This document shows, piece by piece, positions 2,000 to 56,400 of a DNA stretch of 64,000 bases. The stretch lies in the NCBI RefSeq assembly GCF_003704095.1, contig NW_020844463.1, forward strand, positions 124,001 through 188,000, given 5' to 3'. The position numbers and the translations under genes are program-made. The stretch comes from Pocillopora damicornis. Its lineage: Eukaryota. Within the stretch, counting starts at the first letter, position 1; each line of letters opens with the position of its first letter. The notes beneath the pieces were generated by a model, which was not told where the DNA came from, did no database searches, and was given only the letters and a program-made list of their open reading frames with translations.

Positions 2000-2190
2000 G
2001 CTCTCTTCTGTTTTAAAGCACTAAGGAAGCAGCTGTAAGTAGAGAAAACAATCGACAAGTCTCCTGTTTCTCTCCTACGATACTTTTCTGCTTTAGCTGC
2101 TTCCAGTGTGCATTATGATAGGACAGAACGCAGTCGTAGCTTCTTTCTTCGTTGACTTTAAATTTTAATTTCCAATTACAAAGCCCTTAC

Positions 2191-9000: not shown

Positions 9001-12000
9001 TCAAGAACTACAAAAACGCAAGGTTAGACAATGCAGGGCTGGTGGAAATAGATTCCACCTGCTGGACTTCTCTTTTAGTGATCAATCTTCCCTTTTTCGA
9101 AACTCTTTCACCTGGGATATCAGGGAAAGTAAGAAACAGAAGCGCAAAAGCGTAAAGGCGCAGAAACAACCTACAATCTGGCTGCATTAATACGGAGCCA
9201 AATGCAGCCAAGAACTATTTGTTGCAATGCTTTATAGACCTGGACTGAAACTAATCGAACGTAAGCACAGCACAGACGAAAGGAATAAAGAAAGTCACAC
9301 CTTTCTTGCATGTAAACCCATAACAATCTAAGCAATTTACATCGTTCCATTGGAACTTATGGAGAAAGCCAAGAGCATGAACACAGTCCTGGTTGTGAAT
9401 ATTATTCGGTTGGCCGTCAGCCCAGTGATGGAAATCTAGAGCAGTTCGATCGCTCCACACGAATGAACCTTCGTCGTTGATGTCCGAAAGGCCCAACCAC
9501 GAATGACGACTGCCATGTAGACTTTGCACAAACACATTTTCCTCATGGCTGTGGATACTTGGGAGATTGGCTGCTAACGAAGCGCATGTTCTTTGGCTAT
9601 CACTCCAAGAATCGCAAGAGGAGACTTTCCGGTAGCAATACCCATTGTTATAGATCCAGTCATCTTCGCAAATGTCTTTGAGCAAAAAAAATCATAAAAT
9701 CATAAACAGAGGTTACGAGAAAGTTTGTTGAAAAATGATGATTACATTTATCATAAAATAAAATAAAATGTCTTAAAGAAATCTTACCAGACTCGAATCT
9801 ACATATTATAATGAGATGCAAACATTCTTAATGCGCATTGTTGTGGTTCTCGGTCAAGAACAGGAGCCGTAAGAACACACAAGTTTATTACAAAGCACAC
9901 AGAACAGAACTTAGGAAACTTAATCACACCACCAGTGAATAATTATTATTAGGTGCCCATTTTCCTATACAGTGGCTTAGCTACTAGTAATGTGGTAACC
10001 GTTGGCCGTAATATTGGTAATATCACGACACGGATGATTAAACAAAGACACTCCGGTATCACCTTCGATATGCAACGGGAGTAAGCAGCAAATTATAAAT
10101 TTTTAACCTTTATTTAACGTTATTGTCAATATCTATTGGTGTAGTTTTGTTCTTTAGTAGAAACTACCGAGAATGTCTGTAAATCCAATTAATTTTCCAT
10201 TAGAAGAAATGAAATTACTTACTAGTTTAACTAACCAAAAACCTCGCAAGTAAATAAAGAAGTCATATCTGGGAAACGCTAAATCATGCTGACAAGTTGG
10301 CGTCAATATTGTTTTATTTGACGCGGATAACTTGCTTTTATGGGGAAAACTTCCATCGAGGCGAAACCACCAGTAGCCAAAAGTACATCAAAATGCAAGA
10401 ATTAAACTATGATAATAAATTCAATTACCTGTCAACACAGCATATGATACAACCAGTGGATCAAAGCCTTGAACAAACAGTTCCTTAACACAAACTCGTA
10501 TGCTTGACTCGGTAATGAACTGTATTACAGAAAAGACACGTTAAGAAATGGATGCTGAGAGGATTCTGAACGTCGCGAAAAATGTTCACGTTGTACAGCA
10601 AAGGCAAGGCGCGTGTTAAAAGAAACTACACTGGGTTGAAAAGGATTGAAAAGGTCACTTGATAAAACCAAATTATTTTGTTCATTCTTAACCTAATCTA
10701 ATACGAAACATCCCTTTCAGTAACTCACATATTTCACTCTTTTATTTGGTGCCATATGAAAATTTGACTCTTTCATTCTTTACTTTCGTATTTGCTTCAC
10801 CTTGTCACTTCTCAGATTTGTTGCCTGCGTCGTTACCGCTTTCCGTCTTCAAGTAGTTTTGGTTCAGTATTTCAACTTTTCTTTTTTACGATATATTTTG
10901 CAAAAAGCATTAGTAAGACAAGAAGACCCCGTACGTTAGAGACTATACTCAGTAAAAAGCCCTGGTTTCTATGGAAAGCTTTTTTCTTCGTTGTTTTCTT
11001 TTACCTATAGGTATGCACGATGAGAAACGGGGTTCTACAAGGATATCTCTGAGTGGAGCACAACTGAAAGCTTCGAAATGAAAAACAGTGTCATTTTTGC
11101 CTCGCGTATCTTTCCAGGGAGAATTGCGGTGATCACTCCGTTCCCTTGACTAGGAAAATCAAATGAAACGGCGGTCACACTTGCAAGCAAGTGTTATTTT
11201 AATACCTCAATCCAGTTAGCAATTCCATTGCATTCTGCGGCAGTGTCTCCTACATTTCTGGGGTGTGTTGCTGTAATCAAAACAGTCGGTGGTTTACTAT
11301 AGTTTTTAATAAGGGTTGCCTCCTGTTGATCAAAAAATCCTTTCAGGACACATTCGTTTAAAACGTACAAAGTAGGTGTGAAGTAAGTTCAATTTTTTTA
11401 GATTTTATCGTCAGCTTACGGATTTTAGCCACAAATTTGTTGCAAAAATATGATCAAAAACTGCACACATAAACATGGTGGCAAAAGCCTCTTTTTTCCT
11501 GCCTGGTAGTTATGGTTTTAGCCCCTCCCCCCCCCCCCCCCCTTAAAAAAAGGTTAGTCTCTATGATTTATCAAACCGCGTCACTAGAGTTAAAAATGAT
11601 GGGTGGGAAGGAGGGTAAAGGAGGCTCAGTAAGCCAATGATTCCTTGCCAATGTAGGTTGAGTTAGTGCCCTTTTAAGCTCTGAAGATCAGAGATTGTTG
11701 GGCTCTTCAATTCCTCCGAAGGTACAGCCACATTAGGCTTGAAAATTTTTCAGTCCGTTTGCTACTAACCTTAATTGCGGGAGATCCCCGCGGTATATAA
11801 CACTGACCTCAAAAACTTTATTAGTTATGAAAATACTTTACCATTCATATGCGTCTTATTTTTACCTGACAAAAAGCGAAGTTGTGATCTGCCGATGGTA
11901 AACCGCCATTGGGGAAGGTTATACTGCCGTGCTCCTTAAAAAATGGCTTAGGGCAATGCTGAAAGACTAGCCAATGCTGCGAAGGAGTAGTACAAATATG

Positions 12001-17187: not shown

Positions 17188-17223
17188 AACTGACTCAGAC
17201 AAATATGAGAAAAAGTCTTTATA
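17188..17223 (-). promoter_or_regulatory. TATA box and initiator of paralog A
   Basis: Minus-strand TATAAA at 17223-17218 and TCAGTT at 17193-17188. The initiator A is 32 nt from the first T of the TATA box and 45 nt upstream of the ATG. Confidence 0.65.
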
Positions 17224-18177
17224 AGAAATGTAGCTAAATATGGAATGACAGCTGACAAATCTTGGTTCCGCAAGGAAATCATTCAAGTAATTTTTTTTCA
17301 TTTATTTCTATAGTTATCATTTCCTGCCTGCCGATACTTTTGATGAACGGTTATTTTTATTTGGGTCTTATCACTACGGCAACTTTGCTCAGAAATGATC
17401 TTCGTTAAGCGATTATATGGTGATCATAAGGTTACATGGATGAACGAAGTTTCTCCGATTTTCTCTGTTCTTATGAACTCAGACATTTGAAACGTTTGGC
17501 CTGAAGTCGCACCGCTGATAGATGTCGTTTTTAAGCGAGGGCTGGTAAAATCTCAGAGATCATTTAATTATCTGTGTTGTTCCGAATTTTTATGAACGTC
17601 GCCGAGCAAGTTATGAGTATTATCGAATGGAAACGGTTGTTCGTTTTTCAGACTGAAACTAGAAATACGTTATAAGTTTGCATGTTTAATAAAATTATGA
17701 GATTAATAATAAATGATAATTGTCATGTCTGTGATTAAATAAATAAAAAATAGCGATAGAGTAGAGATAGCTACTTTTGTCAACATAAATTTAAAGTGGT
17801 TGACATAGAGACAAAGGTCACAACGAAATAACATTGCGATGGGCTGGTTATGTTATTCCGCTCCTTCTTCGTTTTCCTTTTCCTCGTAGTCTCTAATGAT
17901 GCACACGCAATGAAACGCTGATCAAATTCAGGTTATTAATAAACATATCATGCGAGAAATTTGCTTCATCACTACTATTTTTTCACAGTACATAATACCT
18001 CCTTTTAAAAAATGTGATGCGTTACCAGTCACGCCAACCTCACACCCACAAGAAACTTGTTGAAGTCGTTTTAAGAGTTTGGAAGGAGTTCGAATCGCTA
18101 ATGTTTTTTTCGGGAAATACAGGACGGATATCCTTTTTTTGTAAGAGAGTTATGTCTCTATATATGATAAAAAGGTA

Positions 18178-18290
18178 ACAACTTTTCACTGAACTAGAGG
18201 TGGCTAGTGCCGGATATTTACCGAACCGCAAAGCTGCGAGGTAAATATCGGCACCACTTTCGATCAATACTGATGTGAATATTTGTTTAA
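18178..18290. repeat. Short palindromic MITE-like repeat
   Basis: Inverted arms GTGCCgGATATTTACC...GGTAAATATCGGCAC. Confidence 0.55.
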
Positions 18291-18763
18291 GTATATACAA
18301 AAAATACAGTTCGTTCACTCAGTTTGTGAACCAAGAGCGGTTTAAAGAATATCAAAATGATGAAATGACATCGGCCGTCTAGTTATAGTAGACATAATGT
18401 GAGGCTTAAGGGGACACGCAAACGTAGTTTCTACGACCCGTCCGATATCAGCAGATCCCTTAACTGCCGACTTCCAAATGCAATGATTTCCACCGAAATT
18501 TGAAACACGGAGAACAATTAACTAGAACTCCTTCCGGTTGATTTATTTTCATGCGCAATATATTTTTTTTGTTGTCACGGTCTACATAAAACGTTCCTGA
18601 GCGACAAACTCAAAGTTTCCCCCCAAAATCAAAGCCAAGGTGAGTAAATTGGTTTGATGTAGTCATTTATGTGATGCTTATAAATTCAGTTGCGTGATGA
18701 GGTAGATAGGGACCACAAAAAGGAATAGAGAGTGAAAAAGAGTCTAAGGTAGATATCAGTATA

Positions 18764-19756
18764 GAGGGAGCACTGGGATTTTCGGTTTTGCGGTTTTAGC
18801 TATTTTTTAGATCGGTTTTTCGGTTTTTGTGCCGAAAAGCTTCGGTTTCTCGGTTTTGGTGTTCGTTGCGGTTTGCAGATTTTCCATATTTTAGCATTTG
18901 GCTTTCGGTTTTCGCGAAAAATATTGACGGGTTTTAGGATTTGATATTCGATGCGGTTTTCAGTTTTTTGTATTTGACCTAATTTGGTTCAGGTTTCTCT
19001 TTGATCTGAGCGGCAATTACGCGCCTCCAGAGATCTCGAATAGCAGCTAAACACAAATGTTATCGAGAGGAATGTGTGACAAACCAATTGAAATATCGCA
19101 GGGATCCCTAGGTAGCCTACGTGCAGGGGTGGGGGGGGTGGGGAGGGGAGGGTACGGCTACACGAAGGGTTATGCTAAGCGCGGAACATTGCTAGAGTTT
19201 CTTTATCAATGCCACCTCGAAGTTGGCGACCAAGTTACAGGCCACACGTGACTGATTGATTCAACATTCCAATACAATCTCCAAACTTATCAGGTCTTAG
19301 TTCGCAAATGGAAATGTTAGATTAGAGATTTTCGATGAAACTTTCCAGAGCTATAGCTTTTTGCGACTGCAAAATTGCAACCCTGTAGAGGACTTTTGTG
19401 CGAATTTCCTTAATTTAATTAGGCTCCATTACCAGCGGCTGAGTCCGCAAAGACCACGCCCGAGGTCCTCGAGAGAGCAGCTGTTAATTTAAGCAGATAT
19501 TAGAGGATACGAATGCCAAGTCCATGGCATTCATAAATTCTGTAATGAAATTAGTGTAGTTAATTACTCTGTATGCTCCACTTGTCATCACTGTATCAGA
19601 TCGATCAGGGTTGTAATAACTGGGATGTGAAAATGTATCGGTTTTGACAGTTTTGCACGCGGTTTTCGGTTTTGATCGAATTTTTTTTCGGTTTTTTGGT
19701 TTTGGATGATTTTTTCTACGGTTTTGTGGTTTCTAATAGGCCCCAAAGCCCCCCTC
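18764..19756. mobile_element. Non-autonomous DNA transposon/MITE with subterminal CGGTTTT arrays
   Basis: Imperfect terminal inverted repeats GAGGGAGCACTGGG / CCCAAAGCCCCCCTC. Dense CGGTTTT motifs at both ends. No transposase ORF. Confidence 0.65.
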
Positions 19757-20605
19757 AATATAAATACATACAAATAGATGATTGGGCTTTGTACGAAAGT
19801 AATTCATTTCGGAAGAGTTCAGTCTGTCAGTGTGTCTAAGCCTAAGATGAGGCTGAATTTTCAAAAACTTCCAAATAGAATGAAAGCACCGCCTCATGTT
19901 TAAAATAAAATATGCGTTTTTTTCCGATTACAACGAACGAAAGTGATATATAGAATAGAAAATTTTAATTATCTTCTATTTGTGCCTACATTTACATGGA
20001 AAACAAAGATTTCAGTGGCTGTGAGCATTTCAGGGTAGTTCAGCACTAATATCTCCTCTATTATCTCTCGCCTTGTTCGATAGTCAGTTGGCCCTTAGAA
20101 TCTATGTAGTTGTATTGCATCTTATTCTCCGAGCTATAAATTGTCAATCATAGTCTATTTTAACCTCTCACCGTTCGAAATCAGGAAGATTTACCTCTAT
20201 ATATAGTACCCAAAACTGTGCGTTTTTGCATCCCCGAATACTCAGCTACGACTGTAAATTGTATAGGGTATATATAGTATGATTTATTTCTATTGAATTC
20301 TAGGACCTACTGGTACAAAGGATAATATGCCATAGGTTATTCTCCGCAAAAAATGGATGAAATAAAATAAAATTTTCATAAGAATTCAAAAATGCCGTTA
20401 GATACTGATCTCTTTACACTCTCCAGCAAATCTTTCTTAAAGACGAAACATTTCGCACTTCAAACATTAAACATATAAATCTACCGGCAAATAAAACTTA
20501 ATTTTCGTTTTAGTTTGTTTAAGTGATGAGCCAAATCTGCAAGGGCGAATTTCAGTAGCCAATAATCTACCTAGTATCTATCTACAAGCTTTTCAGCTGT
20601 TGTTA

Positions 20606-20755
20606 TTAATTATAACGGAGACACCGTCTCAAATAAAGTTTGACTGCTGCTGCTATTATGACTAAAAATATTATTACCACGACCTGCACTACTATTACAG
20701 TTGACAAGATATCAAAATCATGAGTTTTCGAGGGTGTTTTGATATCAGTTGACGT
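20606..20755 (-). CDS. Paralog B in-frame post-stop extension (49 aa): linker, TM helix, basic tail
   Basis: TGA then TSTDIKTPSKTHDFDILSTVIVVQVVVIIFLVIIAAAVKLYLRRCLRYN then TAA. Confidence 0.7.
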   Translation of the reverse strand, partial: TSTDIKTPSKTHDFDILSTVIVVQVVVIIFLVIIAAAVKLYLRRCLRYN

Positions 20756-23700
20756 TCAAATATTACATTCAACACCTGCATCCTCAGCGTGCGAGCAATA
20801 GCGAGATGAACCGTATGGACAGTCCAGCAATGATTTTTCGTCCCCTTTGCATCTGACAAGGTTTCTATGGATAGGACCGGAACCTTGACCGTAAATTGCG
20901 CTTCCACGCGCTCTGTGTGCGCCTTTGTAACCTAGCTGACGGCAGATGACTGTTGCATCATTCATGTCCCATTTGTGATCACAGATAGTTCCCCACTGCC
21001 CTCCTATTAGAACCTCTACGCGGCCATATTTTCTACCTCCGGATATCCTTACATTGGTAGAACCAAAACTGCACTTCATGCTGGCGTCTTGTTTATGAGT
21101 ACAATCGTGGTCTCCCCATTTTCGTTTATTGCACTTGTGGAGATGAGTCTCACCCCCTGAGCAGCGCACGTCGTCAAGCCAGATTGGTCCACTTCCTTCG
21201 CCATGTGCAGCGCTCGTAAACGCCCTATCAGCAAGTTTGAAGCCAAGCTCTCTACAAACTACGTTAGCAGCGTTACGGTCCCAGTTGTCATGGCAGACGG
21301 TCCCCCATTTACCATCGTAGAAAATTTCCACTCTGCCAGTAAACTTGTTGTGCGAAGAGGTGCTATTCATACGCACACTGCCATCCGTTATTGCTATCAA
21401 TAAAATTAAATAAGATATATTTTGGATAAAAAAAAAATAATAATCGTAGAGGGAAGAAGGGCAAGCAAAAAAAAACCGGACCCCCACCCCCCTCGTTGGC
21501 TCAAGGTCTGCATCCGCCACTGATACTCTTAAAAAAACAAAGACTGTACTTGAATCACAAAAACCAATTCTTGTGCCCCTTAAGCCACTGTACATTTCTC
21601 TATTCGCTAAGAGCGAAAATTATGTTTTAAATCCACGCAGAATACACCACATAGCATGTATTTTGGTGGACAAGTTTATAACTTAGTCGAATACGGCGAA
21701 TTCTTTGAAAGGTAAATTAAAAAAAGGATGTGAGTGAACTTTCAATGATAGGGTCAACTGAGGGACAGTAACTTATTCAGCAAAATCGAAAAAAACCTTA
21801 CATGATAAAACAACAAAGCCAATATATGCATCAATTCTTTTCTAAAGGCTTGCCTATCACAAGTAAACTGGTATAATGTCCATTTAACGGCGTATCTCAA
21901 TACCCATTCCTGATTAGAAAACTTCATAAAATAACGCCCCTATATATACACACCGCGCTTGGTTAACTCACGCTGTCTCTTCTCAGATAGTGACAGTAAA
22001 CCGTACGCCTTGTTTTCGTTTATACAGGACCTCATTTAAACTAGCTTAAAGCTGAACTGGGTCAGCCAGCACAAATAATATACAATACATACGTACAACC
22101 TACCTCGATATTCTGCCAAAAATCCTCTATATTCTTTACTAGCATCAGATTCAAATCTCACAAAAAGATTATTGAATGTGCTTGTGAACGATTCCTGGGG
22201 GGTAGTGTCTCCAAACAAAGTACCAATCACAGGAGCAGAAGCTGATCCACCATCGTGCATGAAGACCTTATCTTGCTTATCCTCAGTGTCCAAACGTAAA
22301 AAGACAAGATCAATTTGTCCATTTGACGTTATATTCCATGTGCAGTTCATGTTACTTTTGTATTTAGTAGCCTTTGAATTATCAATTGGCTCGATGTACC
22401 CTGCTGAATTTGATAGCCATATTGTTGTATCGGCACAGGAAGAAGTTACCGTCGCGTAAGGTGCTGTAAAAGTAGCGAGAGTATATTTTTAAAGATGATT
22501 TTGTCCTGATAAGTCGATATGTTCTACATAGGTGTGTGAATGACGCGTGAATTTTTCAGTCTGGGATCAGATGTTCCGTCTCAGCGTTTTTTGCTATCAA
22601 AACATAGACGCTATTGATCAAGGGCAGTTTAAATAAGGTTTCAAAGGGGATAACCAACAGCCGAATTTTAACTATTATAAGAAAAAAAAAGTTACTGTAA
22701 AAACCTTCCTTTAAACCATAACGGAAAGAACTTTAAAATGGCCGTATAAACCGTCACCCCACTGAGATCCTCTTTAAGAAATGAAATAATTTGCCTCGCA
22801 TGTAAGCAAAGTGACACCAATCAGTAAAGCAGTTGCTGCAGGAATAAATTGTGAGAAAATTTGTCGATGAAATCGGTGTTTTGTGAATAAATGATTGAAA
22901 CTAGGACGTTAGAGAAAGTCACAATAGGAAAAAAAAGCGTCATGGGAAACGGAGGCATCAAACGAAAAGTTTAAACATTTTTCAGCAGGAGATTCGCAAT
23001 TAACTGTTGGAAACTTACCCCCACATTCTTTAACGATTCCTGCCAGGCCGGTTCCTGCCAGGCCAAGTTCACATCTACATCTATAGGAACCAGGAACATT
23101 CTCGCAGGTCGATTTGGCAGGGCAGGTATAAAAACTGCTTCCCAGGTCGCACTCCTTCCAGTCTGTTTCCCACGGAAAAAAAAAGGAAAAAAAAGTGTTT
23201 GCACACTTTAACTACAACATATTCATATCTCAAGATCACAATAACTTGGTTTTATTCCAAATATCAAACAGTTTGATTGGTTTTTTTTTCTAGTGTTAAA
23301 TGTTGAAATAATCTGCCATAGGGTTGAAAATATCAACTCGCTGTTGACTGAGTTATTCTGTTAGTCATAATTTAAATCAAGATACCTTCACATTTTTTGT
23401 TTGCATCCAGAAAGAATCCTTTATTGCATTGGCAGTCGTAACCGTCAGGCTCATTAACGCAATGAGAATCAGCTGGGCAGTCATAATTTTTGTCAGCACA
23501 TTCATCATAATCTGTAAAAGAAAGCAAACACAAAATGGTTATTCAGTTTCTTATTATGGTTATAGCAGGTGAAATAAATAAAAAACAGTCTATGACTGCA
23601 TGTGCCTACTGCTGTATAGCTGTGTAGTACTGCAGTGTAGTAAAGCAATGTTGTATAATTTCCTTTTCATCCTTTTTATTTTAAAAGACCGGTTGCAAAA

Positions 23701-26700
23701 GCAAAATTTTATGACAATAGGCAAAAAAATAAATTCTAGGAAGGCAGTGGGCACAAAAACGGAACTTCTTCTTAGCGATCCCAACTGAAACAAAACAAAA
23801 TTGTGGCAAAACTATTGTTTCACTGAAGCATGACAGTTACTACGCAATTTTCTAGATGTTCCATATGATATTTTCAGCTGAAGTACACTTCTATATGTTC
23901 TTTTAAGCACTAACCTCTCTTGCAAGAATATCTGTGACAATCAGAGCAGTTCACGTCATTCCATTCGTAATGATGATTTTTAAGGAAGCCAAGAGCATGA
24001 ACACAATCTTGATTGCCATAGTTGTTTGGTTGGTCCTTTGCCCAACGCCTGAATTTGGATGTGCTCTTGTCGCTCCACACAAAATTCCCTTCAGAGTTGA
24101 TATCATTGAGCCCCAACCAGGAGTGTTCTCCACCATGCAGACTTTGGACAAAAACGTTTTCTTCCTGGTTACGTATGCTGGGAAGGTCAGCTGACTTTAA
24201 GCCGCATGCTCTATTGCTGTTGTCCCAGTTATCGCATGCAGCCACTTGACTGTAGCAATAGTTATCGAAATAGTACCAGTCGTCTTTACAAATGCTGTCT
24301 GTAAGATAAACACGATTGACAGTTTTTTTTTTGTTTGTTTGTTTGTTTTTTTTTAATTGGTCGTTCTGTTTTAACTATTTAGTGCATTGTTATATTTGCA
24401 GTCGGGTAAAGAGCAAGGTGAGGCTGATTTTTGTGAAGGATTTCTTTCATTTAAAAGGTGAGAAATGACTCTAGGTTAGAAGTTATTGACTCTTGTCAGC
24501 TCTCGGGTACCTCGAGAATAGAGCCTTTATTTAAGAAATAGAGAAGCCTTGACTGTGCTCTGTTCTGTTGTAAAGTACGCAGGAAGCGGCTAGAGCACAA
24601 AAGAAGTTCCTGAGCACAGTCAAGGCTTCTTTATATGTGTTATAATAAAGAATACGTTAAATTCCCCATGCATTTCTTTCAATTTTCAAAACAAACTTTA
24701 TTTCCAAAGCGAACAATAATGTCGTCTGCATGCTTTTTACTCTCATAAAGCACACCACAATAAGCCAATCAGAATCCCTTTCAGAATGGTTCAAATAACC
24801 TATTTGGCTGTACAAGACTAAAGCTGTCAAAACTGTCAAACCATCAAAGTTCACTTTCTGCAATAGATTACAAACTTAAACAGTTCGGCGGGTCGAATTT
24901 AACATTTTTGCCTGCAGCTTTTTAGTCTCTAATACAGACTCTGAAAGTGAAATGTTCAGTGAAATTCGGCTGAATTGTGGCTCATAAAAACTAGCAAGTT
25001 CCTTCACATGACAAGTAGAAAACAAACTGTTCAAGGCGAGCGTTTTATGAATGAATGACAGCCGAATTCACCGGAACATGAAGATTGCTCGGGATGACAG
25101 CACCGTAAAACTCGGCTGCAGTGGCTGATGTGGCCTTCCAATCAACGCATTAAAAAGGATATCAGAGCAAGCTCTTATGTTTTTTTCACTCGAAGGGAGG
25201 TCGATGTAGTTACTGAGGCCTGCTTCACTAGAATGGCCAATGATCGCCATGATTAGCTAGCCGCAATGGACCTCAGCATGATCGCAGTCGCTCTGATACC
25301 GTCATGTTTAGTATGAATTGTAACGTGCAGTTAAGCCAGTTTGGTAATATTTTCATCGTTCCTGTTTTGTTTTCTTTTGTTCTTGAGCACGAAACTTATA
25401 TATTATACGAGTGTTAGCTGTGTTTGTTTTTAATTACCGTACGTAAGCTTGCAATCTAACTGAGCTTGAAATCCTTTAAAACTAAGACTGTTCATTTCGT
25501 TTTCTCTTTGAAGAATTTCGTCTCTGTTCACGTTATAATAACGTAAATTACGGCGCCTGGCATGTTTACTAACCTTTCTTTGGTTCTTCTGTTGTTACTT
25601 GCCAGCTTGCTTGTTCCGAAATTTCACTTTCAGTAAACGAAAACGAGCTAAAGAGAATTCCCGGAAAAGGCCGGCCATAGTACAATTCGGCAGATAACAT
25701 GAAAGCTTTAGCTCATCTCTATACTCTATACTCTCATAGAGCACGCTCTTTTAACCAATGACAGCACGTGTTATATCCCAACTTTATGAAATTATTATCA
25801 CTACCCTTTCTTTTATTCTTAATTTACTGGTAAACGTATGTGATTTCTTTTTTCTTTTGAATGTAATCTGTTTCACTATAAGGAACACCAAGTGTTCAAT
25901 TGTATTGCTAAGTGAGGACTTTAAATACGCTAGAGGTTGTCATTAATAAAGGCCGGCTCTCCGCCTATTAGATTATTCGTACCTCCCAACACCGCATATG
26001 AAACGTTCAGTGGGTCAAAGCGTTGCACTTCCAATTCTTTCACACAGATTCGGAATGCCTTCTCTGTGATATACTTTAAAAAAATAAAACAAAATTTCTT
26101 TTTTATTATAGAGCTAGGCGTATCTAATTATTTGACACCATCGAAACGAAACATTGTCTAGGTATATATAGTTGAGTGTTGATGACACAACTCTGTAAAT
26201 GCTACGACAACAAAGTTGACAACAACAACAAACATGCAAACAGAAACAAAAAAACAAACACTTTGAAAATGCAATGGTTTATTTTGGTAGGTAAAAATCA
26301 TATTTGTAATTACAGTCCCCTGATCCTCGACAAAACTGAACCATTGAAGTACGGAAGCAAACGAAGGCCCAAAGAAAAATATGCATGGTAACATACTGTA
26401 AAAGCATAAAAGAAGCTTGCTATCTAAACCTCATGCCATGATAATGGAGAAGTTATAATTTGACACACCTCAATCCAGCTTACGATTCCATTGCACTCTG
26501 CTGGAGCGTTGCCTCCACTGGTAGAATGACTGGCGCTTATAAATACTTTTGGGGGCTTTTTGTAAGCCGATCTAGTGTAACTCACATCCTTTTGATGAAA
26601 TGAGGAAAATTCTCGATTGCTTGATATATAAGTCATTCAACCAATTAGATGAAATCAACAATTATAAAATCAAGAAAATACGATTATTGCATAATGCATT

Positions 26701-28259: not shown

Positions 28260-31200
28260 TTACCTATTTATACTCCAAGGTGTAGAGAGGCACAATGAGA
28301 GTAAAGTGATCTGCTCAAGAATACGACGCATTGACTCGGCCAGGTCTCGAACGGAGCGAACTGACCATAATGGCACCGCGTCTCCCGCAAGTTGAAATAG
28401 GAATAACACAATCCTTGTTTGACAACAAAAGAGTTAAAAAGTGCAAGTTTCTAGAGCACTTTTCAAAGCAGCATAAAAAATTAATACGATGTATATCACA
28501 AAAAATGTCCAAATCTCCTTACTCTTAAATTACAGAGGAATACATACCTTTGGAGATAAAGGGACTGTTACGCAGCTAGTTCCAGTCGACCATGTTGTGA
28601 AATTCGCTTCCCCTGCTACTCCTCCAGGTGGATTTCCCTGATAGGCCATCCAGTCTATTGAAGGGAAGCTGTCTGCAAGGTATTTGTTCTTTCCAGTTCG
28701 AGTAACACAGGCCGTAAACTGAGTAATGTTAACGCTTTCGACCCAAGGTGTAGCAGCTTCATGTACCCAATCGGCATACGAGTAGTTGAAGTGGTTCACA
28801 GTGAGTTGCACATGAACTTCCTTAAGAGGATAGAATATGAAAGGTTTGAACTTGATCACAACACACTGATCCTCTATCCCGGGAGGAGGATTTGGAAACT
28901 CGTATCTTCCTTTCTGCATAGGGAAACCTACAGTTGGACGGAAATAACAACAACGAAAACGATTTCAAAAATTCACGTTTTGACTATAGGGAAAGGAGTC
29001 AGAATAGGCTCAGCCATATCGAATGGACTGTTAATCATCTGATTGCCCCAAGATAACATATTTATCATATCATGTTATAGGTGAGGTCGCCTTAATTTTT
29101 TTCATACTCTTCCAAATTTTGGTGTATTAAGCTACATGAAATTTTAAGGTTGCTACAATATGCAATACGGCGCCAAAACTTTGTCTCCGGCCTGTCTTGT
29201 ACAAGGTGGACATATTGAAATGAGTTAATTTTTGCTGATGAGTTCCTCTATTCTTTGGAAGGAGTTCATTTATACCTCAAAAGTCTGCTGGAAAGTTTGG
29301 TTTGCTCCCTAAGTTTTCAAAGGCCCAAAACGAAATGCGTGGGTATTTTCTGCAGGATGACGGGCATTTTCAGGGAAGGAAGGCGAGCTGTTTTGCGAGA
29401 TGACCGTTTTGCAATTTTTAAAAACTCAGAATTCAAAATAATTTTGGCTATTGTGAATCGAGCCAGAAAGATTTTTTCGCCCATTTGCACCTTTTGAAAA
29501 TCAAGTTCTTGTGCTATGTTGACACTCAAGCTTATCCATGTGCTCGAGAAGAAATATAATCGATATTAACACTTCGAGAATTTGCGATTTTATGATCAAA
29601 CCAAAAAGTTATTATTTTTTCCCCATTCCACGTCTCATTGGAAATCGCGATCTCTCAAGCTACGATAGCTCCAGATGAAAAGAAGGTAACTGCGAAGTCT
29701 TAAAATTAACTTTAGAAAAATTTTAAAAACCAATATATCGTGCCACTCAGTAAAGCTTTTTAACCTTTCTACGCCTCTTTTCTGACATATTCTTTCTCGA
29801 ACCAGTCATGGGACTCCAACGGCAACCTCAATGAACACAAAACATTTCGACTTACTCCCCTTATTTTGCAAACTCAAGATTTCTCTAGGGGTTGTCGTCC
29901 AAGCAAAACAAGAAACTCACTTAAGACTTCGTTAACATTAAAATTACATATTTTCACGCCCTTATTACACGCGCCAAGCAAGCCACAATCTCTGGAACCC
30001 CGTCATCATTCAAAATTCTAAAATTATCGCTCCGAAGTTGCCGCTTTAGCAAAACGTTATTTGTCATCCATCATTTTCGCCAGGTAATATTTACAAACAC
30101 AAGCCGTCAAAGGTAACAACTTGAAGGATATAAACTGTGAATACACACAAAAATTCACTCCATGATGCCGGAGAAGGCTTCGAAATAATCTTCGGTGAAC
30201 TCTATTTCATGTAAATATAGCTTATTTCATGGTTACGGAGCGCGTGCGATTCTTTTTTACGAGTTTTGACAAATAAAACGAAACAACGGGGAACTAACGA
30301 GTGAGCTTCCTTTTTCATAGCGAGTTTATAAAAACTGAACGAGCAGAGAAGAGCAAAACAAAACAAATAAACAAATAAATAAACAAAAGGAACAAAAACA
30401 ACAAAAGAAAACAATAAAACAAGCCAAAAACATTGCACTCTGCAAATTGCGAGAAAATTGAAAAGGAATATAGGACTAACGTTCGAAACGTCAGATTTAG
30501 AAATCCTTTGAGAAGGGTAATCTACATTATCAACTCAATTAATAAAACCAAATTATCTTTTCAGATCTCTCAGTCTCGAAGTAAAAATAAAATTCAAGTA
30601 GTTAAGAGGAATGTAAGGGTACTTTTGGCGAAGTTAAATAAACAAAAAGACAATATTTTATACCATTGCATCTTCCAGGATGATAGTTTGTATAATTGCC
30701 GCGTTCTTCACAAATCGTTTGTTTGAAGTCACACATATTCCTGAAAGTTCGACCGTTGGAACCACAGACATGTTCCTCGTACGATGGGCAGTTACTTCGG
30801 CAGCGACATTCATACGTCCACTCATCACGAGCACGGCAGAAGCTTTCGTAAGTGCAGTTAATATTTCTACACGGGTCGAGGTCTATAATAGAATAAGAAA
30901 TCACACATTTAGTGAATGGAAGGCATGAAAGTTTTAGGCGGTCTAAACCGAGTGAGCAAGGGAATAAAAAGAACAAAAAAAACAACAATTTTAACAACAA
31001 AACAAGATGAAGATTTATTACCCCACAACGGCAAAAGAACAAGAGAAATCATGGAGTGATTGACTCACTCACTTTTAACATTTTGCTGTGCTTAAGTGAC
31101 AAATATCTCATGAAATTGAATAATACATAGACAATTTAACCATATCTAACGTACAATGCTAGTACAAACGGGGTTTGACTTCAAATGGGTACAAAATATT

Positions 31201-43150: not shown

Positions 43151-46100
43151 TTAACTTGAACGGAAACACCGAGTCAAATATAGATTTATTGCAACCGCTA
43201 TTATCACTCACACTATAATTACTGTGATTTGCGTTACTATTACAAGCAACAAGACATCAGAGACATCAGTGTTTGAGGGTTTTCTGATGTCAGTAAACAG
43301 TCGTGTGCTGCACACCACACTTGCATACTCAAAGTGATAACAATGGTGATAGGTACCATAAGGACAGTCAAGCACATCTTTCTCGCTTCCCTCGCAGTAA
43401 ACATGATCTCTATGGAAAGTACCGGAGCTTCGCCCGTATTGCTCGCCACGCTGCGCGTGTTTTGCACCTTTTATGAAGCCTAACTGATGGCAGACGACAT
43501 TTGCATCCAAGATGTCCCACGTGTGGTCACATATAATTCCCCATTGGCCCCCTACTAAAACTTCAACACGGCCATAGTTGTGTGAACCTCCCGCCAACCG
43601 AAAAATATTGGAACCATGGGTGCACCGCACGCTAACGTCTCGTTTATAAGTGCAGTCGTGTTTTCCCCATTCGTCATGAGTGCATTCGTGGAGATATTTT
43701 TCATCAGGGGAGCAAGGCCGATGCCGACGTGTTTTGCAGACAGCTTGGCTTCAAAGAAGAAGCCGCACAACCTTGTAAGGACGCTACTCATGGCGAAGGA
43801 AGCGGACCTATTTGGCTTGACCACTTGGTTTGTTCAGGAAATTTTCCACCAATGTTTCTGGATCTTGCTATTTATTGCTCTTCCTTTTACTACACAGAAA
43901 TTTGAACTTGGGAACAATTCCTGCAGGGGGTATCGTTTATGGTGATGTATTCCGCTCTGTTTGTTCTCCTATGGCCATTTCACTCGAAATGTGCGTTTTT
44001 CGACAAATCTGATGGCATCTTCAGTGATAGAAAACCGTCTTGTAAAGGCCATCGTTTGACAGTGAGGTCTTAAGCAGGTCTTTGTTGGACTCAAAGGTGT
44101 GCAATAATTGCTATAATCGCTACATATATTACTGTGGCGTTCGGTGCTGTGAAATCAAAGAAAGTTAGGTTCAGAAATAAGGCTTTCGCTGATATGTCAA
44201 CACGTCATAAACCCCACATACCTTGATCATTGTGTAAATAAAAGTTAATAAAGCATAAGTAGCTGGAAGAAAATCAAGGATAAGAGTGTCTCGAATATTT
44301 ACTTCGAGAGCTTCATCAATGAGATCTGTTTGAGATTCATACTTCGACGACAAAGGAAACAAAAAGTGAAACTCTGGTTAGCTTAAAAAAAGCCTGTGAG
44401 TCTAAACGCTAGATCGCAAGAAGGCAAAAGAGGAAAACATTGTAATGCAGGCGTATTAAACAAATGTCAAAGACCTACCTCCACAGGTTATATCGGTTCC
44501 TGCTAAGCCTGGATCACATCTTCATCCATAGGTACCAAGAATATTCTTGCAGGTGGCATTGACATGTCAAGTTGACGCAATCTCTTTGCTCTTGCATTCG
44601 TTCACATCTGTTTTGCATTGAAAAAGAAAAAAAAAGACTTTGCAAACCATTCCTACAGCATATTCATATCTCAAGGACGTAGTCGACTTTGTCCGCCGAT
44701 GTTGCTTTCTGTTGTATTCAAGTCATACATATCAAATACACTCAATCTGACTCGATTCGTCTACGGTAATTGACAAATCGACTCACCGGAAATCGAATCA
44801 TGGGTCTTAGGGGTCGAATCGTCCGATTTAAGTGAAATCGAGTCAATTCGATAACAGTTTAGCCCTCTCTCGTAGTAAGCTGTAGAACATTTGTAAGTGA
44901 CTTCCGGTATGACATTTCTATCTCAAGAGGAACTCTTTTATTCAGATGACCGTAATAAGCTCGATTCGAAGCTTGACTTAAACGAATCGTATCAATTTGG
45001 GTATATTGGACAACCTTCTTCCAAGTGACGAGAGATTAATTTTCTTTCTGACATCAAATGTTGAAATAACCTACCTAGGTGTTGAAAATCGCGACGCACC
45101 ATAGAATAAGTTTTAGATAAAATCTAGATACCTGTACGGTAGTTAATGATTTTATCCAAATTGAATCCTTTGTTACAAATGCATTTGTAGTGGCCAATAA
45201 CATTTACGCAATGAGAATAGGGTGGACAGTGATAATTTTGGTCAGCTCATTCATCATAATCTGCAAAAGAAAACAAAAACAAAATGGTGATTCCGTTTCT
45301 TTTTAAGGTGATGGCAGGCGAAATAAAAATTATGGCAAAACTTAATTTTTCAATGAAGCATAACAGTTACTGCACAATTCCCTCGATGTCCCGTGAGATA
45401 AAAATTAGCTATACTGTACTTCATGTTCTTTAAGGCACTAACCTCTCTTGCAGGTAAATCGGTGACAATCAGTACAGTTTACGTCATTCCATCCGTAATG
45501 ATGATTTTTGAGGAAGCCAAGAGTATGAACACAATCTTCATTGCCATAGTTGTTTGGTTGGCCCTCTGCCCAACGCCTAAATTTGGATTTGCTCTTATCG
45601 CTCCACGCAAAATTCCCTTCAGAGCTGATATCATTGAGCCCCAACCAGGAATGCTCTCCACCATGCAGACTTTGAACAAAAACGTTTTCTTCTTGGTTAC
45701 GTATGCTGGGAAGGTCAGCTTGCTTACGGCGACAAGCTCTATCGCTGTTGTCCCAGTTATCGCATGCAGCCACTTCATTGTAGCAATAGTTATCGAAATA
45801 GTGCCAGTCGTCTTTGCAACTGCTGTCTGTAAGATAAACACGAGTTACGGTCTTTTTTTCTTTTTTGAATTAATTATAGTCATACTCTTACAACTATTTA
45901 GTTCTTAGGTCGTGGAAAGAACGATGAAGGGCTTATTTTCTTAGAGTTTTTTTTCCCTATAAAATGTGAAGAATGATTCTTCAGCTGTAAGTCTAGTGTT
46001 ATCTTTCCTACTCTTTATGTTATCCTTTATTTGCAGGTATACTTATGTAATTTTTTTCCTTCTGAATGTGATGCGTTCCATGTATAATGAGAAACGCTCG

Positions 46101-53068: not shown

Positions 53069-53092
53069 TTTATTCATTTCAAAGTGAACTGA
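53069..53092 (-). terminator. Candidate polyadenylation signal of paralog D
   Basis: TCAGTTCACTTTGAAA-TG-AATAAA, about 70 nt downstream of the extension stop codon. Confidence 0.55.
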
Positions 53093-53145
53093 ATCCCCAG
53101 AAACGTCACGAGTGGCACGTGTCAAGGCTCGTTTTGTTCTCGTTT

Positions 53146-53403
53146 TTAGCTATTATCCATATGCTGATTGCAAGCTTCCCACACAGTTGTGCTCTCATTA
53201 TCGAGGAGAGCTGCAGTGTTTTCAGTAATGTTTGTATTAACTATGAAATTCTTTCTACCCGAACGGAAACGACGAATCACATATAGTTTTACCACTACAG
53301 CTATTATAACTAATACTACTATTAGTCCGACCTGAATCACTATTACAGGTAAAAGGACATCCATGACCTCAGTGTTAGAAGGTGTCTTAATATCAGTTAA
53401 CGT
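53146..53403 (-). CDS. Paralog D in-frame post-stop extension (85 aa): linker, TM helix, cytoplasmic tail
   Basis: TGA then TLTDIKTPSNTEVMDVLLPVIVIQVGLIVVLVIIAVVVKLYVIRRFRSGRKNF...HMDNS then TAA. The ORF-track entry 53146..53364 is in the same frame as 53404..54042. Confidence 0.75.
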   Translation of the reverse strand, partial: TLTDIKTPSNTEVMDVLLPVIVIQVGLIVVLVIIAVVVKLYVIRRFRSGRKNFIVNTNITENTAALLDNESTTVWEACNQHMDNS

Positions 53404-56400
53404 TCAATTATGACAAACAACACTTGCATCTTCAGAGTGCCAGCAATGATGAGATGGACAGTGTGGGCAGTCCAGCAAAGATTCTTCGTTCCCCTCGCAA
53501 TAGACATGGCTTCTTTGGATGGGACCGGAGCCTTGTCCGTATGCTGCGCCTCGAGGTGCAGAGGTCGCACCTTTGAAACCGAGCTGACGGCAGACGACTT
53601 TTGCATCATTGATGTCCCAGGTGTGATCACAGATAGTGCCCCATTGGCCTCCAACTAAAACTTCAACGCGGCCATAATTGTGGGATCCACCCGCTAGCCG
53701 AATGATGGAAGAGCCATATGTACACTTCACGCTGGCGTCTCGTCCATGCGTGCAGTCATGCTTTCCCCATCCTCGATGCCTGCAGTCGTGGAGATTTTTC
53801 TCACTCCCTGAGCAAGCCAAATCGTCAAGCCAAATTGGTCCGCTTCCTTGGCCATGATAAGCGCTTCTGTAAGCTTGCAAGGCTTGTTTGAAGCCAAGCT
53901 GTCTGCATATCACGTGAGCATCGTTCAGGTCCCAAGCATCATCGCAGATGGTCCCCCATTTGCCATCATAGAAAACCTCTACTCTTCCAGTTGATGGGCT
54001 GGTGCTATTTATACGTACGCTGCCATCAGTAATTGCTGGCAAAAAAAATTAAATTTTTTTTTGAGGTGAATACAGACTAAATAAACTTAAAATATTAACT
54101 GTCTCCTTTTCTGGCTGTCTTTTTATTATCATTACAATTATTGTATTATTTAATTTTTTACACCTTTTCCCCAAGGGGACATCATTTGCAATAATGTGAG
54201 AACTTTCCCTATGGCCATTTTACGCGTAATTTATCTTTTTTTGACAAATTTAATGGCATTGCACCAGTCGATAAAGTCCGGGTATTAAATTTGGATGTAA
54301 AAGAGTATCATAGAATGGGGTGATAACGCTATCAGTTCGATTGCACAAAAAAAGAAGTTCCTGAGTACACAAAACTTTGATTCATTACCGAGATCCGAAA
54401 TGAAATTCCTCTAAATAGTATCCATAAATTTTTGCTATTATAACAATCTTGTCTTTCTGGCAACAAAATATTTCCTGATGAAGCTTGGTTTGTGAGTCAA
54501 AGAAAATTTGCGATTGACTTTCTGATTAAACAAGAAATTGTTGTGTGGAAATAACAACATAGTCTACATAATGAGGCGCTGAGGTCTTTCTGAAGGGTCT
54601 CCTTCTAAGTCAATCCCATGAAATTACTTAGTTACTGCGAAGGAAATAGTATAATTGAGAGTAAAAAAAGAGTAAAAGAAATCATAACTTTTGCTTACCT
54701 CGATAACGAGCCCGAAATCCTGCAAATTCTTTCGAGATATCTGACGTAAACCTCACATAAAGGTTGTTGGACGTGCTTGTCAAAGATTGCTTGGGCAAAG
54801 TGTTTCCAAATAAAGTACCAATCAAAGGAGAAGAACGTGATACACCATCGTACACAGTGACGATATCGACCTTATCCTCAGTTTTTAAGCGAATAAAAAC
54901 AAGTTCAATATGTCCATTTGAGGTTATATTCCATGTACAGTCCATGTCACTTTTGTAGGTTTCCACATGACCAGGCACAGGGGCATCATTGGACTCGATA
55001 TAGCCAGTTGAATCTGACTGCCATACAGTTAAATTGGTACAAGAAGATATTACGGTGGCGTTCGGTGCTGTGGAGTTAATAAATGAAAACAAGTTTAGGA
55101 TATAAGGCTTCGCCGCTTACATTTCAATATATTCAATACAAAAATTAAGTTTATCAGTGTGAGAATAGTTCAATCTTTCTATCAGTAAAGAGTAACTGTA
55201 AAAGTTTTACTGTTTATGCCGATGACACGCAACTAATCTGCTGAGAAACAGAGACCAAACTCGTCGATAACAAAAGTGTGAAAGTTAAGTTTGAAAAAAA
55301 CAACAACAACAGCAAACAAAAAAAAAACAAAAGGTAGTAGAGGCGTTTAATTACTTTGCAGAAACTTACCACCACAGGTTTTACCGGTTCCTGCTAAGCC
55401 TGGAGCACATCGACATCTATAGGTACCAGGAATATTCTCGCAGCGAGCTTTGACATGACATGTGTAGGTTCCCAAGCGGCATTCATCCATATCTGTTTCG
55501 TATTAAAAGAATAAGAAAACGGCCTTTCACTGAGATATACAGACATAGACATGAGTTTTCTGATTTATTCCAAAGATCAGTCACTTCGATTCTATCGCTA
55601 TATGTCAAACACTGAAGTTAACTTTCGAGGGGGTAAGAAAGGTTAATGAAATGAACGTACTCTTTTAAAAATTTGAAATTCTAAGACAGCATATTTTATA
55701 ATTTATTATCAGCTAATGTATCTATTTATTGTTAAAATTAACAAACCTTCGCACTCCTTGTTACATCCAAACGGTATGAAAGGTGAATGAAACAAACGTA
55801 CTCTCTTTTTAAATATGAAATTCTAAGACAGCATATTTTATGAGTACTTATTAATTATTATATCTGTTTATTGTTAAAATTAACAAACCTTGACAGTCCT
55901 TGTTGGCATCCAAACGGAAACCCTTATTACACTTGCAGGTGTATGAGCCATCATTGTTAATGCAATGAGAATCTGCTGGACAGTGATAATTATAGTCGAT
56001 ACATTCATCATAATCTGAAAAAAAGATTTTTAAAAAGATTGTTAAAAAGCATATAGGTGGTTATTTGGTAGGTTATTTTGCTGATCACATCTGGTGAAAT
56101 TTTATGTACTCGAAATTGTTTTTATAGCTATTCAAAACGAAACAAAGCATCTAGCCTAACTGTCTCCCCGCTCTTTTGTTAACTACTACGATACACCATA
56201 CCATCCAATCTTCATTTGAACGTTCATATAAAACCGCCAGATCTGCCACATGCACACTCATTTTACTAACCTTTCTTGCAGGTAAATCTGTGACAATCAG
56301 TGCAGTTCACGTCATTCCACTCGTAGTGATGGTTTTTAAGGAAGCCAAGAGTATGAACACAGTCTTCATTGCCATAGTTGTTTGGTTGGTCCTTCGCCCA

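What the first reader, a model, noticed from the sequence alone, without database searches (positions are those of the whole stretch)
20606..20770. Second instance of stop followed by a TM helix, in paralog B
Seen: VECNI-TGA (20758-20756) is followed by TSTDIKTPSKTHDFDILSTVIVVQVVVIIFLVIIAAAVKLYLRRCLRYN-TAA. The peptide aligns with D without gaps (TDIKTPS, VIVxQV, LVIIA, VKLY, RR), even though flanking introns of B and D are barely alignable by eye. No AG acceptor lies between the TGA and the start of the hydrophobic segment in B, which argues against splicing around the stop. Inference: the extension stayed under protein-level selection while sitting behind a stop codon.
Basis: partly seen in the sequence, partly recalled or inferred. 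Interest (0 to 1): 0.8.

Follow-up and report, generated by a model that had tools for sequence, protein, structure and literature searches.

The report
Conserved stop before a membrane anchor
In two neighbouring coral immune-type (SRCR) genes a TGA stop codon sits between the secreted part and an intact membrane-anchor coding tail, and the tail has evolved like coding sequence, so the stop may be leaky, but a recent truncation is not excluded.

Summary
In paralog B on the minus strand, VECNI is followed by TGA (20758-20756), a 49-codon open frame holding a 23-residue hydrophobic helix, and TAA (20608-20606).

For a translated tail:
- Paralog D has TGA at the same codon. So does every B- and D-type sequence recovered from Tara Pacific coral metagenomes, including three deep B lineages.
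- Paralog C has CGA there.
- Across the TGA-bearing sequences the tail has omega 0.43 (omega=1 rejected, p=0.006), matching the SRCR exon, with no indel over dS about 0.7. Introns of B and D do not align.
- Within the B lineages the tail diverges 9.5-12% with no indels; the adjacent 3'UTR diverges 15-20% with 7-9 indel events.
- Where the junction stop is TAA or TAG (paralog E, C', L031), the tail has decayed.
- CpG hypermutability here is weak (1.4x), so parallel CGA>TGA is less easily excused.

Against it:
- The context is UGA-AC, not the known leaky UGA-CU.
- No stable RNA structure and no SECIS were found.
- B lineages alone give omega 0.73, not different from 1.
- The cytoplasmic ends vary.
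- No RNA or ribosome data could be obtained.

Odds: readthrough-type recoding giving secreted plus anchored forms about 0.5; relic tail after late or parallel nonsense mutations about 0.35.

The parts
20759..21393 (-). Paralog B, coding part of the last exon: two SRCR domains ending ...VECNI. The exon starts after a phase-1 acceptor near 21393.
   Evidence: Pfam SRCR E=2e-60, two stretches. Translation. Exon boundary read and from the cDNA contig L032, where CUB joins ...AITDGSV. B-O pN/pS is 0.52, p=0.002, so the gene is under purifying selection.
20756..20758 (-). In-frame TGA at the junction between ectodomain and tail (context UGA-ACG).
   Evidence: The same TGA is in a 99.5% identical Tara contig (L018), in the deep B lineages O (L006, L007, L015, L016, L017) and B2 (L033-L037), and at the homologous codon of D, D_L029 and L008.
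20711..20755 (-). Tail, linker TSTDIKTPSKTHDFD (15 codons).
   Evidence: B and D differ here mostly at third codon positions. The first 35 nt or so after the TGA are identical in B, O and B2.
20642..20710 (-). Tail, hydrophobic helix ILSTVIVVQVVVIIFLVIIAAAV (23 codons).
   Evidence: Best 19-residue Kyte-Doolittle mean 3.4. No charged residue or stop in the helix in B, O, B2, D, D_L029 or L008.
20609..20641 (-). Tail, short cytoplasmic end KLYLRRCLRYN. It is shortened by a 17-nt deletion relative to C and D, shared by the whole B clade.
   Evidence: Alignments.
20606..20608 (-). TAA ending the tail frame. Indels between B lineages begin right after it.
   Evidence: a 27-29-nt indel starts about 12 nt after the tail frame's terminal stop.
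22036..22350 (-). Paralog B, CUB-domain exon.
   Evidence: Pfam CUB E=1e-11.
23910..24245 (-). Paralog B, C-type lectin exon.
   Evidence: Pfam Lectin_C E=8e-19.
53404..53406 (-). Paralog D, junction TGA after ...VVCHN.
53146..53403 (-). Paralog D, tail frame (85 codons plus TAA). The part after about codon 57 is a recent frame extension caused by a 1-nt deletion.
53407..54027 (-). Paralog D, two SRCR domains of the last exon.
   Evidence: Pfam SRCR E=1e-64.
43301..43303 (-). Paralog C, CGA (Arg) at the codon homologous to the TGA of B and D.
43208..43210 (-). Paralog C, TGA inside the hydrophobic helix (TTA in B, D and most C alleles). The site is polymorphic in Tara samples.
   Evidence: 159-aa intact forms versus 140-aa truncated forms.

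Best explanation
B, like D, is a mosaic C-type lectin-CUB-SRCR-SRCR gene of a coral. Its main product is a secreted protein that ends at the TGA. The TGA is proposed to be decoded as a sense codon at low frequency, most likely by near-cognate readthrough and less likely by A-to-I editing to UGG. That would add a linker, a single-pass membrane helix and a short basic cytoplasmic stub. One mRNA would then give a major soluble form and a minor membrane-anchored form, and selection on the minor form would have kept the tail open and hydrophobic.

Shown:
- the anatomy;
- the stop shared by all B- and D-type sequences;
- the coding-type evolution and absence of indels in the tail.

Inferred:
- that the stop predates the B-D split;
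- that the tail is translated at all;
- the decoding mechanism.
For: 1. All seven distinct B- and D-clade sequences carry TGA at the junction, and the frame behind it is open with a clean helix.
2. No allele with a sense codon turned up. The tail searches returned only gene calls made with TGA=Trp for B and D, and the listed B-type clusters of 44-126 members are 214-279 aa; the five whose sequences were read all end at the junction.
3. The codon model on these six TGA-bearing sequences gives omega 0.43, and omega=1 is rejected at p=0.006.
4. B-D tail dN/dS and dS equal those of the SRCR exon. There are 0 indels in 46 codons, while the introns are unalignable.
5. By dS, B and D are sisters and C is the outgroup, so one origin of the TGA is the parsimonious reading.
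6. The CpG transition rate here is only 1.4x the non-CpG rate and CpG o/e is 0.85-0.93. My rough estimate therefore favours a single origin over parallel origins by about 4:1.
7. After the TGA was in place in the B clade, the tail diverged 9.5-12% with 0 indels. The adjacent 3'UTR diverged 15-20% with 7-9 indel events per about 580 nt.
8. Internal control: in paralog E (junction TAG) the first 150 nt after the stop differ by 24% with 2 indels from its ortholog, while its coding part differs by 8%.
9. Every lineage with TAA or TAG at the junction has a decayed or absent tail: E/L032, C' (L009) and L031.
10. The two tail polymorphisms within lineage O are both synonymous.
11. Splicing cannot explain the linker, because there is no AG before the helix in B and O.
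Against: 1. The context UGA-AC is not the leaky UGA-CU(AG) context described for fungi and animals (PMC4207609).
2. No stable RNA structure lies round or after the stop. Z-scores run from -0.7 to +1.6 in B, O, B2 and D.
3. On branches taken to be post-TGA (assuming a single origin of the stop in each clade) there is no frame-specific signal: B clade omega 0.73, p=0.50; N:S 15.5:8.5; my tally by codon position's substitution list is 8, 7 and 9.
4. The number of amino-acid changes between B and O (12) equals the neutral expectation from simulation.
5. The cytoplasmic end is not conserved: a 17-nt deletion in the B clade and a 1-nt deletion in the window's D.
6. The family clearly tolerates anchor loss: a helix-internal stop in the window's C, the TAA in C', and a frameshifted D allele in L008.
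7. Divergence along the B locus is patchy, 3 to 17 mismatches per 60 nt, so the 3'UTR may overstate the local neutral rate.
Confidence: 0.48

Rival explanations
1. Relic tail. The ancestor was an ordinary type I membrane protein with CGA (Arg) at the junction, as C still is. B and D each became secreted proteins through a CGA>TGA nonsense mutation, late and separately or helped by exchange between copies. The tail is now untranslated 3'UTR that has not yet had time to decay. The coding signature dates from before the stops.
For: - C proper keeps CGA with an intact tail in most of 115 cluster members.
- The same codon became a stop in C' (TAA). That tail then gained a second stop and a Glu in the helix.
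- Other anchor-breaking changes exist: a helix-internal TGA in the window's C and a frameshifted D allele.
- Paralog E and L031 end at the same position with a decayed tail or none.
- The pN/pS ratio is low on the B and D stems (0.36-0.46) but about 0.8-1 on terminal branches.
- B clade omega is 0.73, not different from 1.
- The UGA-AC context is poor for readthrough, and there is no structure.
Against: - It needs at least two hits on the same codon in B and D. It needs four or five across the family if CGA was ancestral. Yet the CpG rate is only 1.4x the non-CpG rate.
- The TGA predates the split of B, O and B2 (pairwise dS 0.26-0.29 against 0.71 for B-D). The B tail would therefore have been neutral for at least 40% of its history.
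- Even so it has no indel, stop or charged helix residue in three lineages. It also diverges about half as fast as the 3'UTR and the dead E tail.
- At the 3'UTR indel rate about 3 events are expected on the B-clade tree, which gives P(0) of about 0.05 (my arithmetic).
- No sense-codon allele of B or D was seen.
Confidence: 0.35
2. The TGA is recoded at the RNA level by A-to-I editing (UGA to UGG, Trp), so edited transcripts encode the anchored form.
For: It would explain a conserved genomic stop with a translated tail without needing a leaky context. From my own knowledge, A-to-I editing exists in corals.
Against: ADAR needs double-stranded RNA. The 150 nt round the stop fold no better than shuffled sequence in B, O, B2 and D.
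Confidence: 0.05
3. Nucleotide-level constraint. The 150 nt after the stop is a conserved 3'UTR or termination-context element, or a patch of younger shared ancestry between haplotypes. Its slow recent evolution would then have nothing to do with translation.
For: A block from about -120 to +45 round the stop is nearly identical in B, O and B2, synonymous sites included. Changes in the B clade show no codon periodicity.
Against: - It does not explain third-position-biased differences between B and D ([12, 7, 20]).
- It does not explain an omega of 0.43.
- It does not explain the preserved hydrophobic helix and open frame.
- No Rfam family or stable fold was found.
Confidence: 0.07
4. Selenocysteine insertion at the UGA.
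For: UGA is the Sec codon.
Against: No SECIS match even at E<=10 in 3 kb round B's 3' end or 2.7 kb round D's. Paralog C has Arg, not Cys, at the site.
Confidence: 0.01
5. Splicing removes the stop. A donor before the TGA joins to an acceptor in the tail.
For: GT dinucleotides occur in the Cys codon just before the stop in B, O and D.
Against: - There is no AG between the TGA and the helix in B and O, so the conserved linker could not be encoded.
- The GT is not present in C (TGC).
- The cDNA contig of paralog E is unspliced across the junction.
Confidence: 0.02

Closest known systems
Programmed stop-codon readthrough that adds a targeting signal (MDH1 and LDHB peroxisomal forms; Drosophila readthrough extensions)
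   Same: A conserved UGA is followed by an open frame that evolves like coding sequence, and the extension would change where the protein ends up. Dunn et al. list eight Drosophila readthrough extensions with predicted transmembrane domains (PMC3840789).
   Different: The context here is UGA-AC, not UGA-CU (PMC4207609). No translation evidence exists. Conservation is shown only among paralogs and close lineages of one coral genus. The extension would switch a secreted receptor-like protein to a type I membrane protein.
Engineered leaky stop between a secreted protein and a transmembrane domain, used for cell-surface display
   Same: Identical design: ectodomain, leaky stop, TM helix. [quoted passage not shown]
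   Different: That is a man-made construct with a chosen leaky context. Here it would be a natural gene.
Secreted versus membrane immunoglobulin made by alternative polyadenylation and splicing
   Same: One gene gives a soluble recognition molecule and a membrane-anchored one (my own knowledge; also sketched in PMC6973322).
   Different: That mechanism is RNA processing, not decoding of a stop. No splice option exists here.
Ordinary nonsense truncation that turns a membrane receptor paralog into a soluble one
   Same: A stop at the domain boundary removes the anchor. The cluster is tandem, fast-evolving and immune-type, with other broken copies (C', L008, the window's C, E).
   Different: The tail behind the stop has stayed open, hydrophobic and free of indels in five or more lineages, unlike the tails of E and C'.
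SRCR-domain mosaic proteins of invertebrates (DMBT1-like, SSC5D-like, sea-urchin SRCR families)
   Same: Pfam SRCR domains at E about 1e-60. The best named database relatives are DMBT1-like and SSC5D-like proteins at 45-55% identity. The copies are tandemly duplicated.
   Different: The domain order is C-type lectin-CUB-SRCR-SRCR with this particular tail. The tail was found only in this coral genus's sequences.

Membership tests
Programmed stop-codon readthrough gene | Stop codon conserved across the lineages in which the downstream frame is conserved | tested here: met
   TGA in B, L018, O (5 contigs), B2 (5 contigs), D, D_L029, L008 and P0070.
Programmed stop-codon readthrough gene | Protein-coding evolutionary signature downstream of the stop | tested here: inconclusive
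   Omega is 0.43, p=0.006 over all TGA-bearing sequences. It is 0.73, p=0.50 within the B clade, where the stop was in place if it arose once. Absence of indels and a reduced rate support constraint.
Programmed stop-codon readthrough gene | Leaky stop context (UGA followed by C/CU/CUAG) or a stimulatory 3' RNA structure | tested here: not met
   The context is UGA-ACG, against UGA-CU in PMC4207609. Fold z-scores run from -0.7 to +1.6.
Programmed stop-codon readthrough gene | Ribosome footprints or peptides beyond the stop | not testable with these tools
No ribosome-profiling or proteome tool was available.
Selenoprotein | SECIS element in the 3'UTR | tested here: not met
   No SECIS match at E<=10 in 19000-22000 or 51500-54200.
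SRCR superfamily | SRCR domain with conserved cysteines | tested here: met
   PF00530 E=2e-60 (B) and 1e-64 (D), two domains each.
Type I single-pass membrane protein (for the extended form) | Helix of about 20 hydrophobic residues followed by basic residues | tested here: met
   Kyte-Doolittle 19-residue mean is 3.4 (B) and 3.46 (D), followed by KLYLRR / KLYVIRR.
Type I single-pass membrane protein (for the extended form) | N-terminal signal peptide | not tested
   The first exon of B was not identified. Joined exon models were not built.
Processed or decaying pseudogene (whole gene) | Relaxed constraint on the main coding part | tested here: not met
   B-O SRCR pN/pS is 0.52, p=0.002. B-D is 0.32-0.36. 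All cysteines are kept.

The most novel reading that the evidence does not exclude
A coral pattern-recognition-type gene family has used a leaky UGA, in a context not known to be leaky, since before its paralogs split. It makes a soluble and a membrane-anchored form from one mRNA. Individual copies have since become secreted-only (TAA or TAG, tail decayed: E, C') or anchored-only (CGA: C). That would be a natural evolutionary series of readthrough gain, fixation and loss within one tandem cluster.
Probability: 0.3. Interest if true: 0.8.

Novelty: new variant of a known kind. Interest (0 to 1): 0.55.

Why it matters
If the tail is translated, this would be the first readthrough candidate in a cnidarian that I could find; the literature searches found none. 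It would also be a natural counterpart of the engineered "leaky stop before a TM domain" display trick, setting the ratio of soluble to cell-bound recognition protein at the ribosome.

The cluster offers its own controls. It holds copies with TGA, with a sense codon, and with tight stops plus dead tails. That makes the question directly testable with reporters and mass spectrometry.

If the tail is only a relic, the locus is still a clean example of repeated conversion of membrane receptors into secreted ones at a domain boundary. It is also a warning that metagenome gene callers using TGA=Trp create apparent readthrough proteins from eukaryotic DNA.

Tried and rejected
- **Selenocysteine:** no SECIS.
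- **Stem-loop after the stop** (the scan's note s1-763555): the GAUAUC palindrome pairs, but the folds are no better than shuffles in B and D (z -0.7 and +0.6) and only modestly better in C (z -2.1). The 150-nt folds gave z from +0.3 to +1.6. I do not count it as support.
- **Splicing round the stop:** no acceptor is available, and the related cDNA is unspliced there.
- **Assembly or sequencing error:** excluded, because the TGA is in many independent assemblies.
- **A Trp codon in relatives:** the proteins P0002, P0004, P0005 and P0070 show W at the stop, but the fetched DNA behind P0002 and P0005 has TGA (the contigs encoding P0004 and P0070 were not fetched). P0002 and P0004 also show W at out-of-frame TGAs of the window sequence, so they are gene calls with TGA=Trp (my reading).
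- **Recent gene conversion between B and D round the stop:** I saw no local rise in identity by eye in the alignment.
- **Search for B-type tails at 90% clustering:** it found only P0005.
- **DNA search of the window's own genome with D's tail:** it found only D itself. The protein search found B, C and D only.
- **Paralog A** at the window start: it has lectin and CUB exons, but I found no SRCR-tail exon in the 10 kb before the window.
- **Tree of the SRCR exon:** it could not place E/L032 and L031 firmly; different codon positions give different groupings. The ancestral state of the junction codon therefore stays open.
- **Not attempted:** The pieces were searched apart.
Full report
**1. What is there**

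The window is G000:C1098:124001-188000 of a 234-Mb, 4393-contig assembly. Close relatives of these genes turned up almost only in Tara Pacific coral metagenome assemblies, with a few other Logan/ENA contigs (L014, L031, L032, L035-L037). From memory, the assembly size and contig number fit the published Pocillopora damicornis assembly. I take it as a pocilloporid coral but did not verify the name.

On the minus strand lies a tandem cluster of mosaic genes with C-type lectin, CUB and two SRCR domains. The last exon of paralog B encodes the two SRCR domains (21393-20759). After them come TGA at 20758-20756, 49 sense codons and TAA at 20608-20606. The 49 codons comprise:
- a 15-residue linker;
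- a 23-residue hydrophobic helix (Kyte-Doolittle mean 3.4);
- a short basic end.

**2. The paralogs**

- D has TGA at the homologous codon (53406-53404) and a tail that aligns to B's over 46 codons without a gap.
- C has CGA (43303-43301) and, in this genome, a TGA inside the helix (43210-43208).
- BLAST aligns B and D only in exons.
- By synonymous distance, B and D are sisters (dS 0.6-0.7) and C is outside them (1.2-1.5).
- A protein search of the whole genome with D's tail finds only B, C and D.
- A fifth paralog, E, lies 5 kb beyond the window end (L041). It ends ...AVCHN-TAG, and only the first 50 nt or so behind the stop still resemble the tail.

**3. Is the tail constrained?**

For B against D, the tail has dN/dS 0.35-0.42 at dS 0.65-0.83. 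The SRCR exon has 0.32-0.36 at dS 0.66-0.72. Differences by codon position are 12, 7 and 20.

A codon model on the six TGA-bearing sequences (B, O, B2, D, D_L029, L008) gives omega 0.43 and rejects omega=1 at p=0.006.

So the tail has a coding history. The question is whether that history overlaps with the stop.

**4. Relatives from other samples**

Searching every protein representative with D's tail gave five hits. Several show Trp at the stop. The fetched DNA (L006-L008) has TGA there, and two of the calls (P0002, P0004) also show Trp at out-of-frame TGAs of the window sequence, so they are gene calls made with TGA=Trp.

The sequences obtained were:
- L018, 99.5% identical to B.
- O (L006, L007, L015, L016, L017), syntenic with B at 78-91% identity. 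Junction TGA and an open tail.
- B2 (L033-L037), recovered as the 77%-identical protein P0030. Junction TGA and an open tail.
- D alleles L029 and L008, plus P0070, known only as a protein called with W at the junction. All keep the junction stop and an open tail.
- Many C alleles, most with CGA and an intact 159-aa frame.
- C' (L009-L014), with TAA at the junction, a second stop and a Glu in the helix, and a lost SRCR cysteine.
- L031, a distant relative that ends ...VVCYN-TAA with no tail.
- L032, a spliced cDNA contig of an E ortholog that ends with TAG.

No B- or D-type sequence with a sense codon at the junction was found.

**5. Evolution after the stop was in place**

B, O and B2 all have TGA, so the stop predates their split. 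Their pairwise dS is 0.26-0.29, against 0.71 for B-D.

| Region (B, O and B2, pairwise) | Mismatch | Indel events |
|---|---|---|
| Tail | 9.5-12% | 0 |
| Adjacent 3'UTR | 15-20% | 7-9 per about 580 nt |
| SRCR coding part | 14-16% | 0-1 |

Indels start just after the tail's own stop.

As a control, E against its ortholog L032 differs by 8.0% in the coding part. It differs by 24% with two indels in the first 150 nt after its TAG. The B tail therefore evolves about half as fast as dead sequence of the same origin.

Against this:
- Changes within the B clade number 15.5 nonsynonymous to 8.5 synonymous (pN/pS 0.61), compatible with both omega 0.4 and omega 1.
- The codon model gives omega 0.73, p=0.50.
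- Changes are spread evenly over codon positions.
- Random placement of 18 substitutions keeps the frame open and the helix uncharged 30% of the time.
- Divergence along the locus is patchy, so the 3'UTR comparison may overstate the case.
- By parsimony, pN/pS is 0.36-0.46 on the B and D stems and about 0.8-1 on terminal branches. The difference is not significant (Fisher p=0.17).

**6. One origin of the TGA or two?**

The parallel-origin reading rests on CGA>TGA being a CpG transition. At this locus CpG o/e is 0.85-0.93. CpG sites changed by transition only 1.4 times as often as other C/G sites in the B/O/B2 alignment.

With that rate and the dS-based branch lengths, my rough estimate favours a single origin on the B-D stem over two separate origins by about 4:1.

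If the origin was single and the tail has been neutral since, the data are very unlikely. About 7 indel events would be expected in 138 nt over the B-D path at the 3'UTR rate, and none is seen.

If the origins were separate and late, the data are possible but need some luck, at roughly the 0.01-0.05 level by my estimate.

The junction codon is a stop in every lineage except C proper: TGA, TAA or TAG. That counts fewer nucleotide changes if a stop was ancestral. However, the tree cannot place E and L031 firmly. Selection for clean truncation at the domain boundary could also focus independent stops on this codon.

**7. Mechanism**

- Selenocysteine is out, because there is no SECIS.
- Splicing cannot encode the conserved linker.
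- No RNA structure stands out. That weakens both a structure-stimulated readthrough and ADAR editing.
- The context UGA-AC is not the described leaky context UGA-CU (PMC4207609).

If the tail is translated, it is by low-level readthrough in an unremarkable context or through an unrecognised signal. The 35 nt or so after the stop are identical in B, O and B2. That could be such a signal, or it could be shared ancestry.

Transmembrane helices in readthrough extensions have been predicted in Drosophila (PMC3840789). A leaky stop before a TM domain is used on purpose in display vectors (PMC6973322).

**8. Verdict**

| Reading | My odds |
|---|---|
| Readthrough-type recoding that keeps a minor anchored form | 0.48 |
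| Relic tail after late or parallel nonsense mutations | 0.35 |
| Nucleotide-level constraint | 0.07 |
| A-to-I editing | 0.05 |
| Splicing | 0.02 |
| Selenocysteine | 0.01 |

The decisive data would be reads, ribosome footprints, peptides and a reporter assay.

Pieces on either side were searched apart.

Noticed in passing
window 43151-43704 (paralog C): The window's C copy looks damaged. Similarity to the two-SRCR last exon starts only at the second SRCR (43704), so the first domain is missing. A TGA interrupts the helix at 43208-43210. Most Tara alleles have TTA there and a 159-aa open frame, and a few share the 140-aa truncation, so the stop is polymorphic.
   Followed up: partly
window 53230-53240 (paralog D cytoplasmic tail): The window's D lacks one A (TTAAT-AC) that B, C, D_L029 and L008 all have. 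The deletion extends the frame from about 64 to 85 codons. The long ORF is also called as a separate 72-aa protein (P0001) on 12 contigs.
   Followed up: yes
L008:1511-2083 (D allele, Tara sample): This D allele has a 1-nt deletion inside the last SRCR domain (GGCTCCGG to GGC-CTGG), a frameshift, yet keeps the TGA and an open tail. P0004, a C allele, appears to be shifted at the homologous spot.
   Followed up: partly
L041 (G000:C1098:191405-194677), about 5 kb beyond the window end: Paralog E has CUB-SRCR-SRCR with a run of seven or eight tyrosines and Trp/Arg-rich residues inserted in the last SRCR domain, a junction TAG and a decayed tail. Its ortholog L032 is a spliced cDNA contig, so the gene is expressed.
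   Followed up: partly
L006-L008 and proteins P0002, P0004, P0005, P0070: Metagenome gene callers translated these coral contigs with TGA=Trp, including out-of-frame TGAs. This creates apparent readthrough proteins in protein databases. It was useful here for finding the tails, but it is a trap for annotation.
   Followed up: yes
window 17200-24400 versus L006 and L034: The B locus exists as three deep lineages (B, O, B2), 10-20% apart in non-coding DNA, all found in Tara samples. D alleles differ by only 1.4-3.5%. This may be old haplotypes kept across species, or faster evolution of B.
   Followed up: no
window 30602-31042, 59973-60278, 9251-9685, 2165-3085: Kazal-type exons lie upstream of the lectin-CUB-SRCR units, at 30602-31042 and 59973-60278. 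A further unit ('A') with lectin (9251-9685) and CUB (2165-3085) exons sits at the window start. Its SRCR-tail exon was not found.
   Followed up: partly
L009:2501-3300 (C'): C' has TAA at the junction, TAG and Glu in the helix, and Cys>Tyr in a conserved SRCR position. It looks like a dying copy and shows what decay of this tail looks like.
   Followed up: yes
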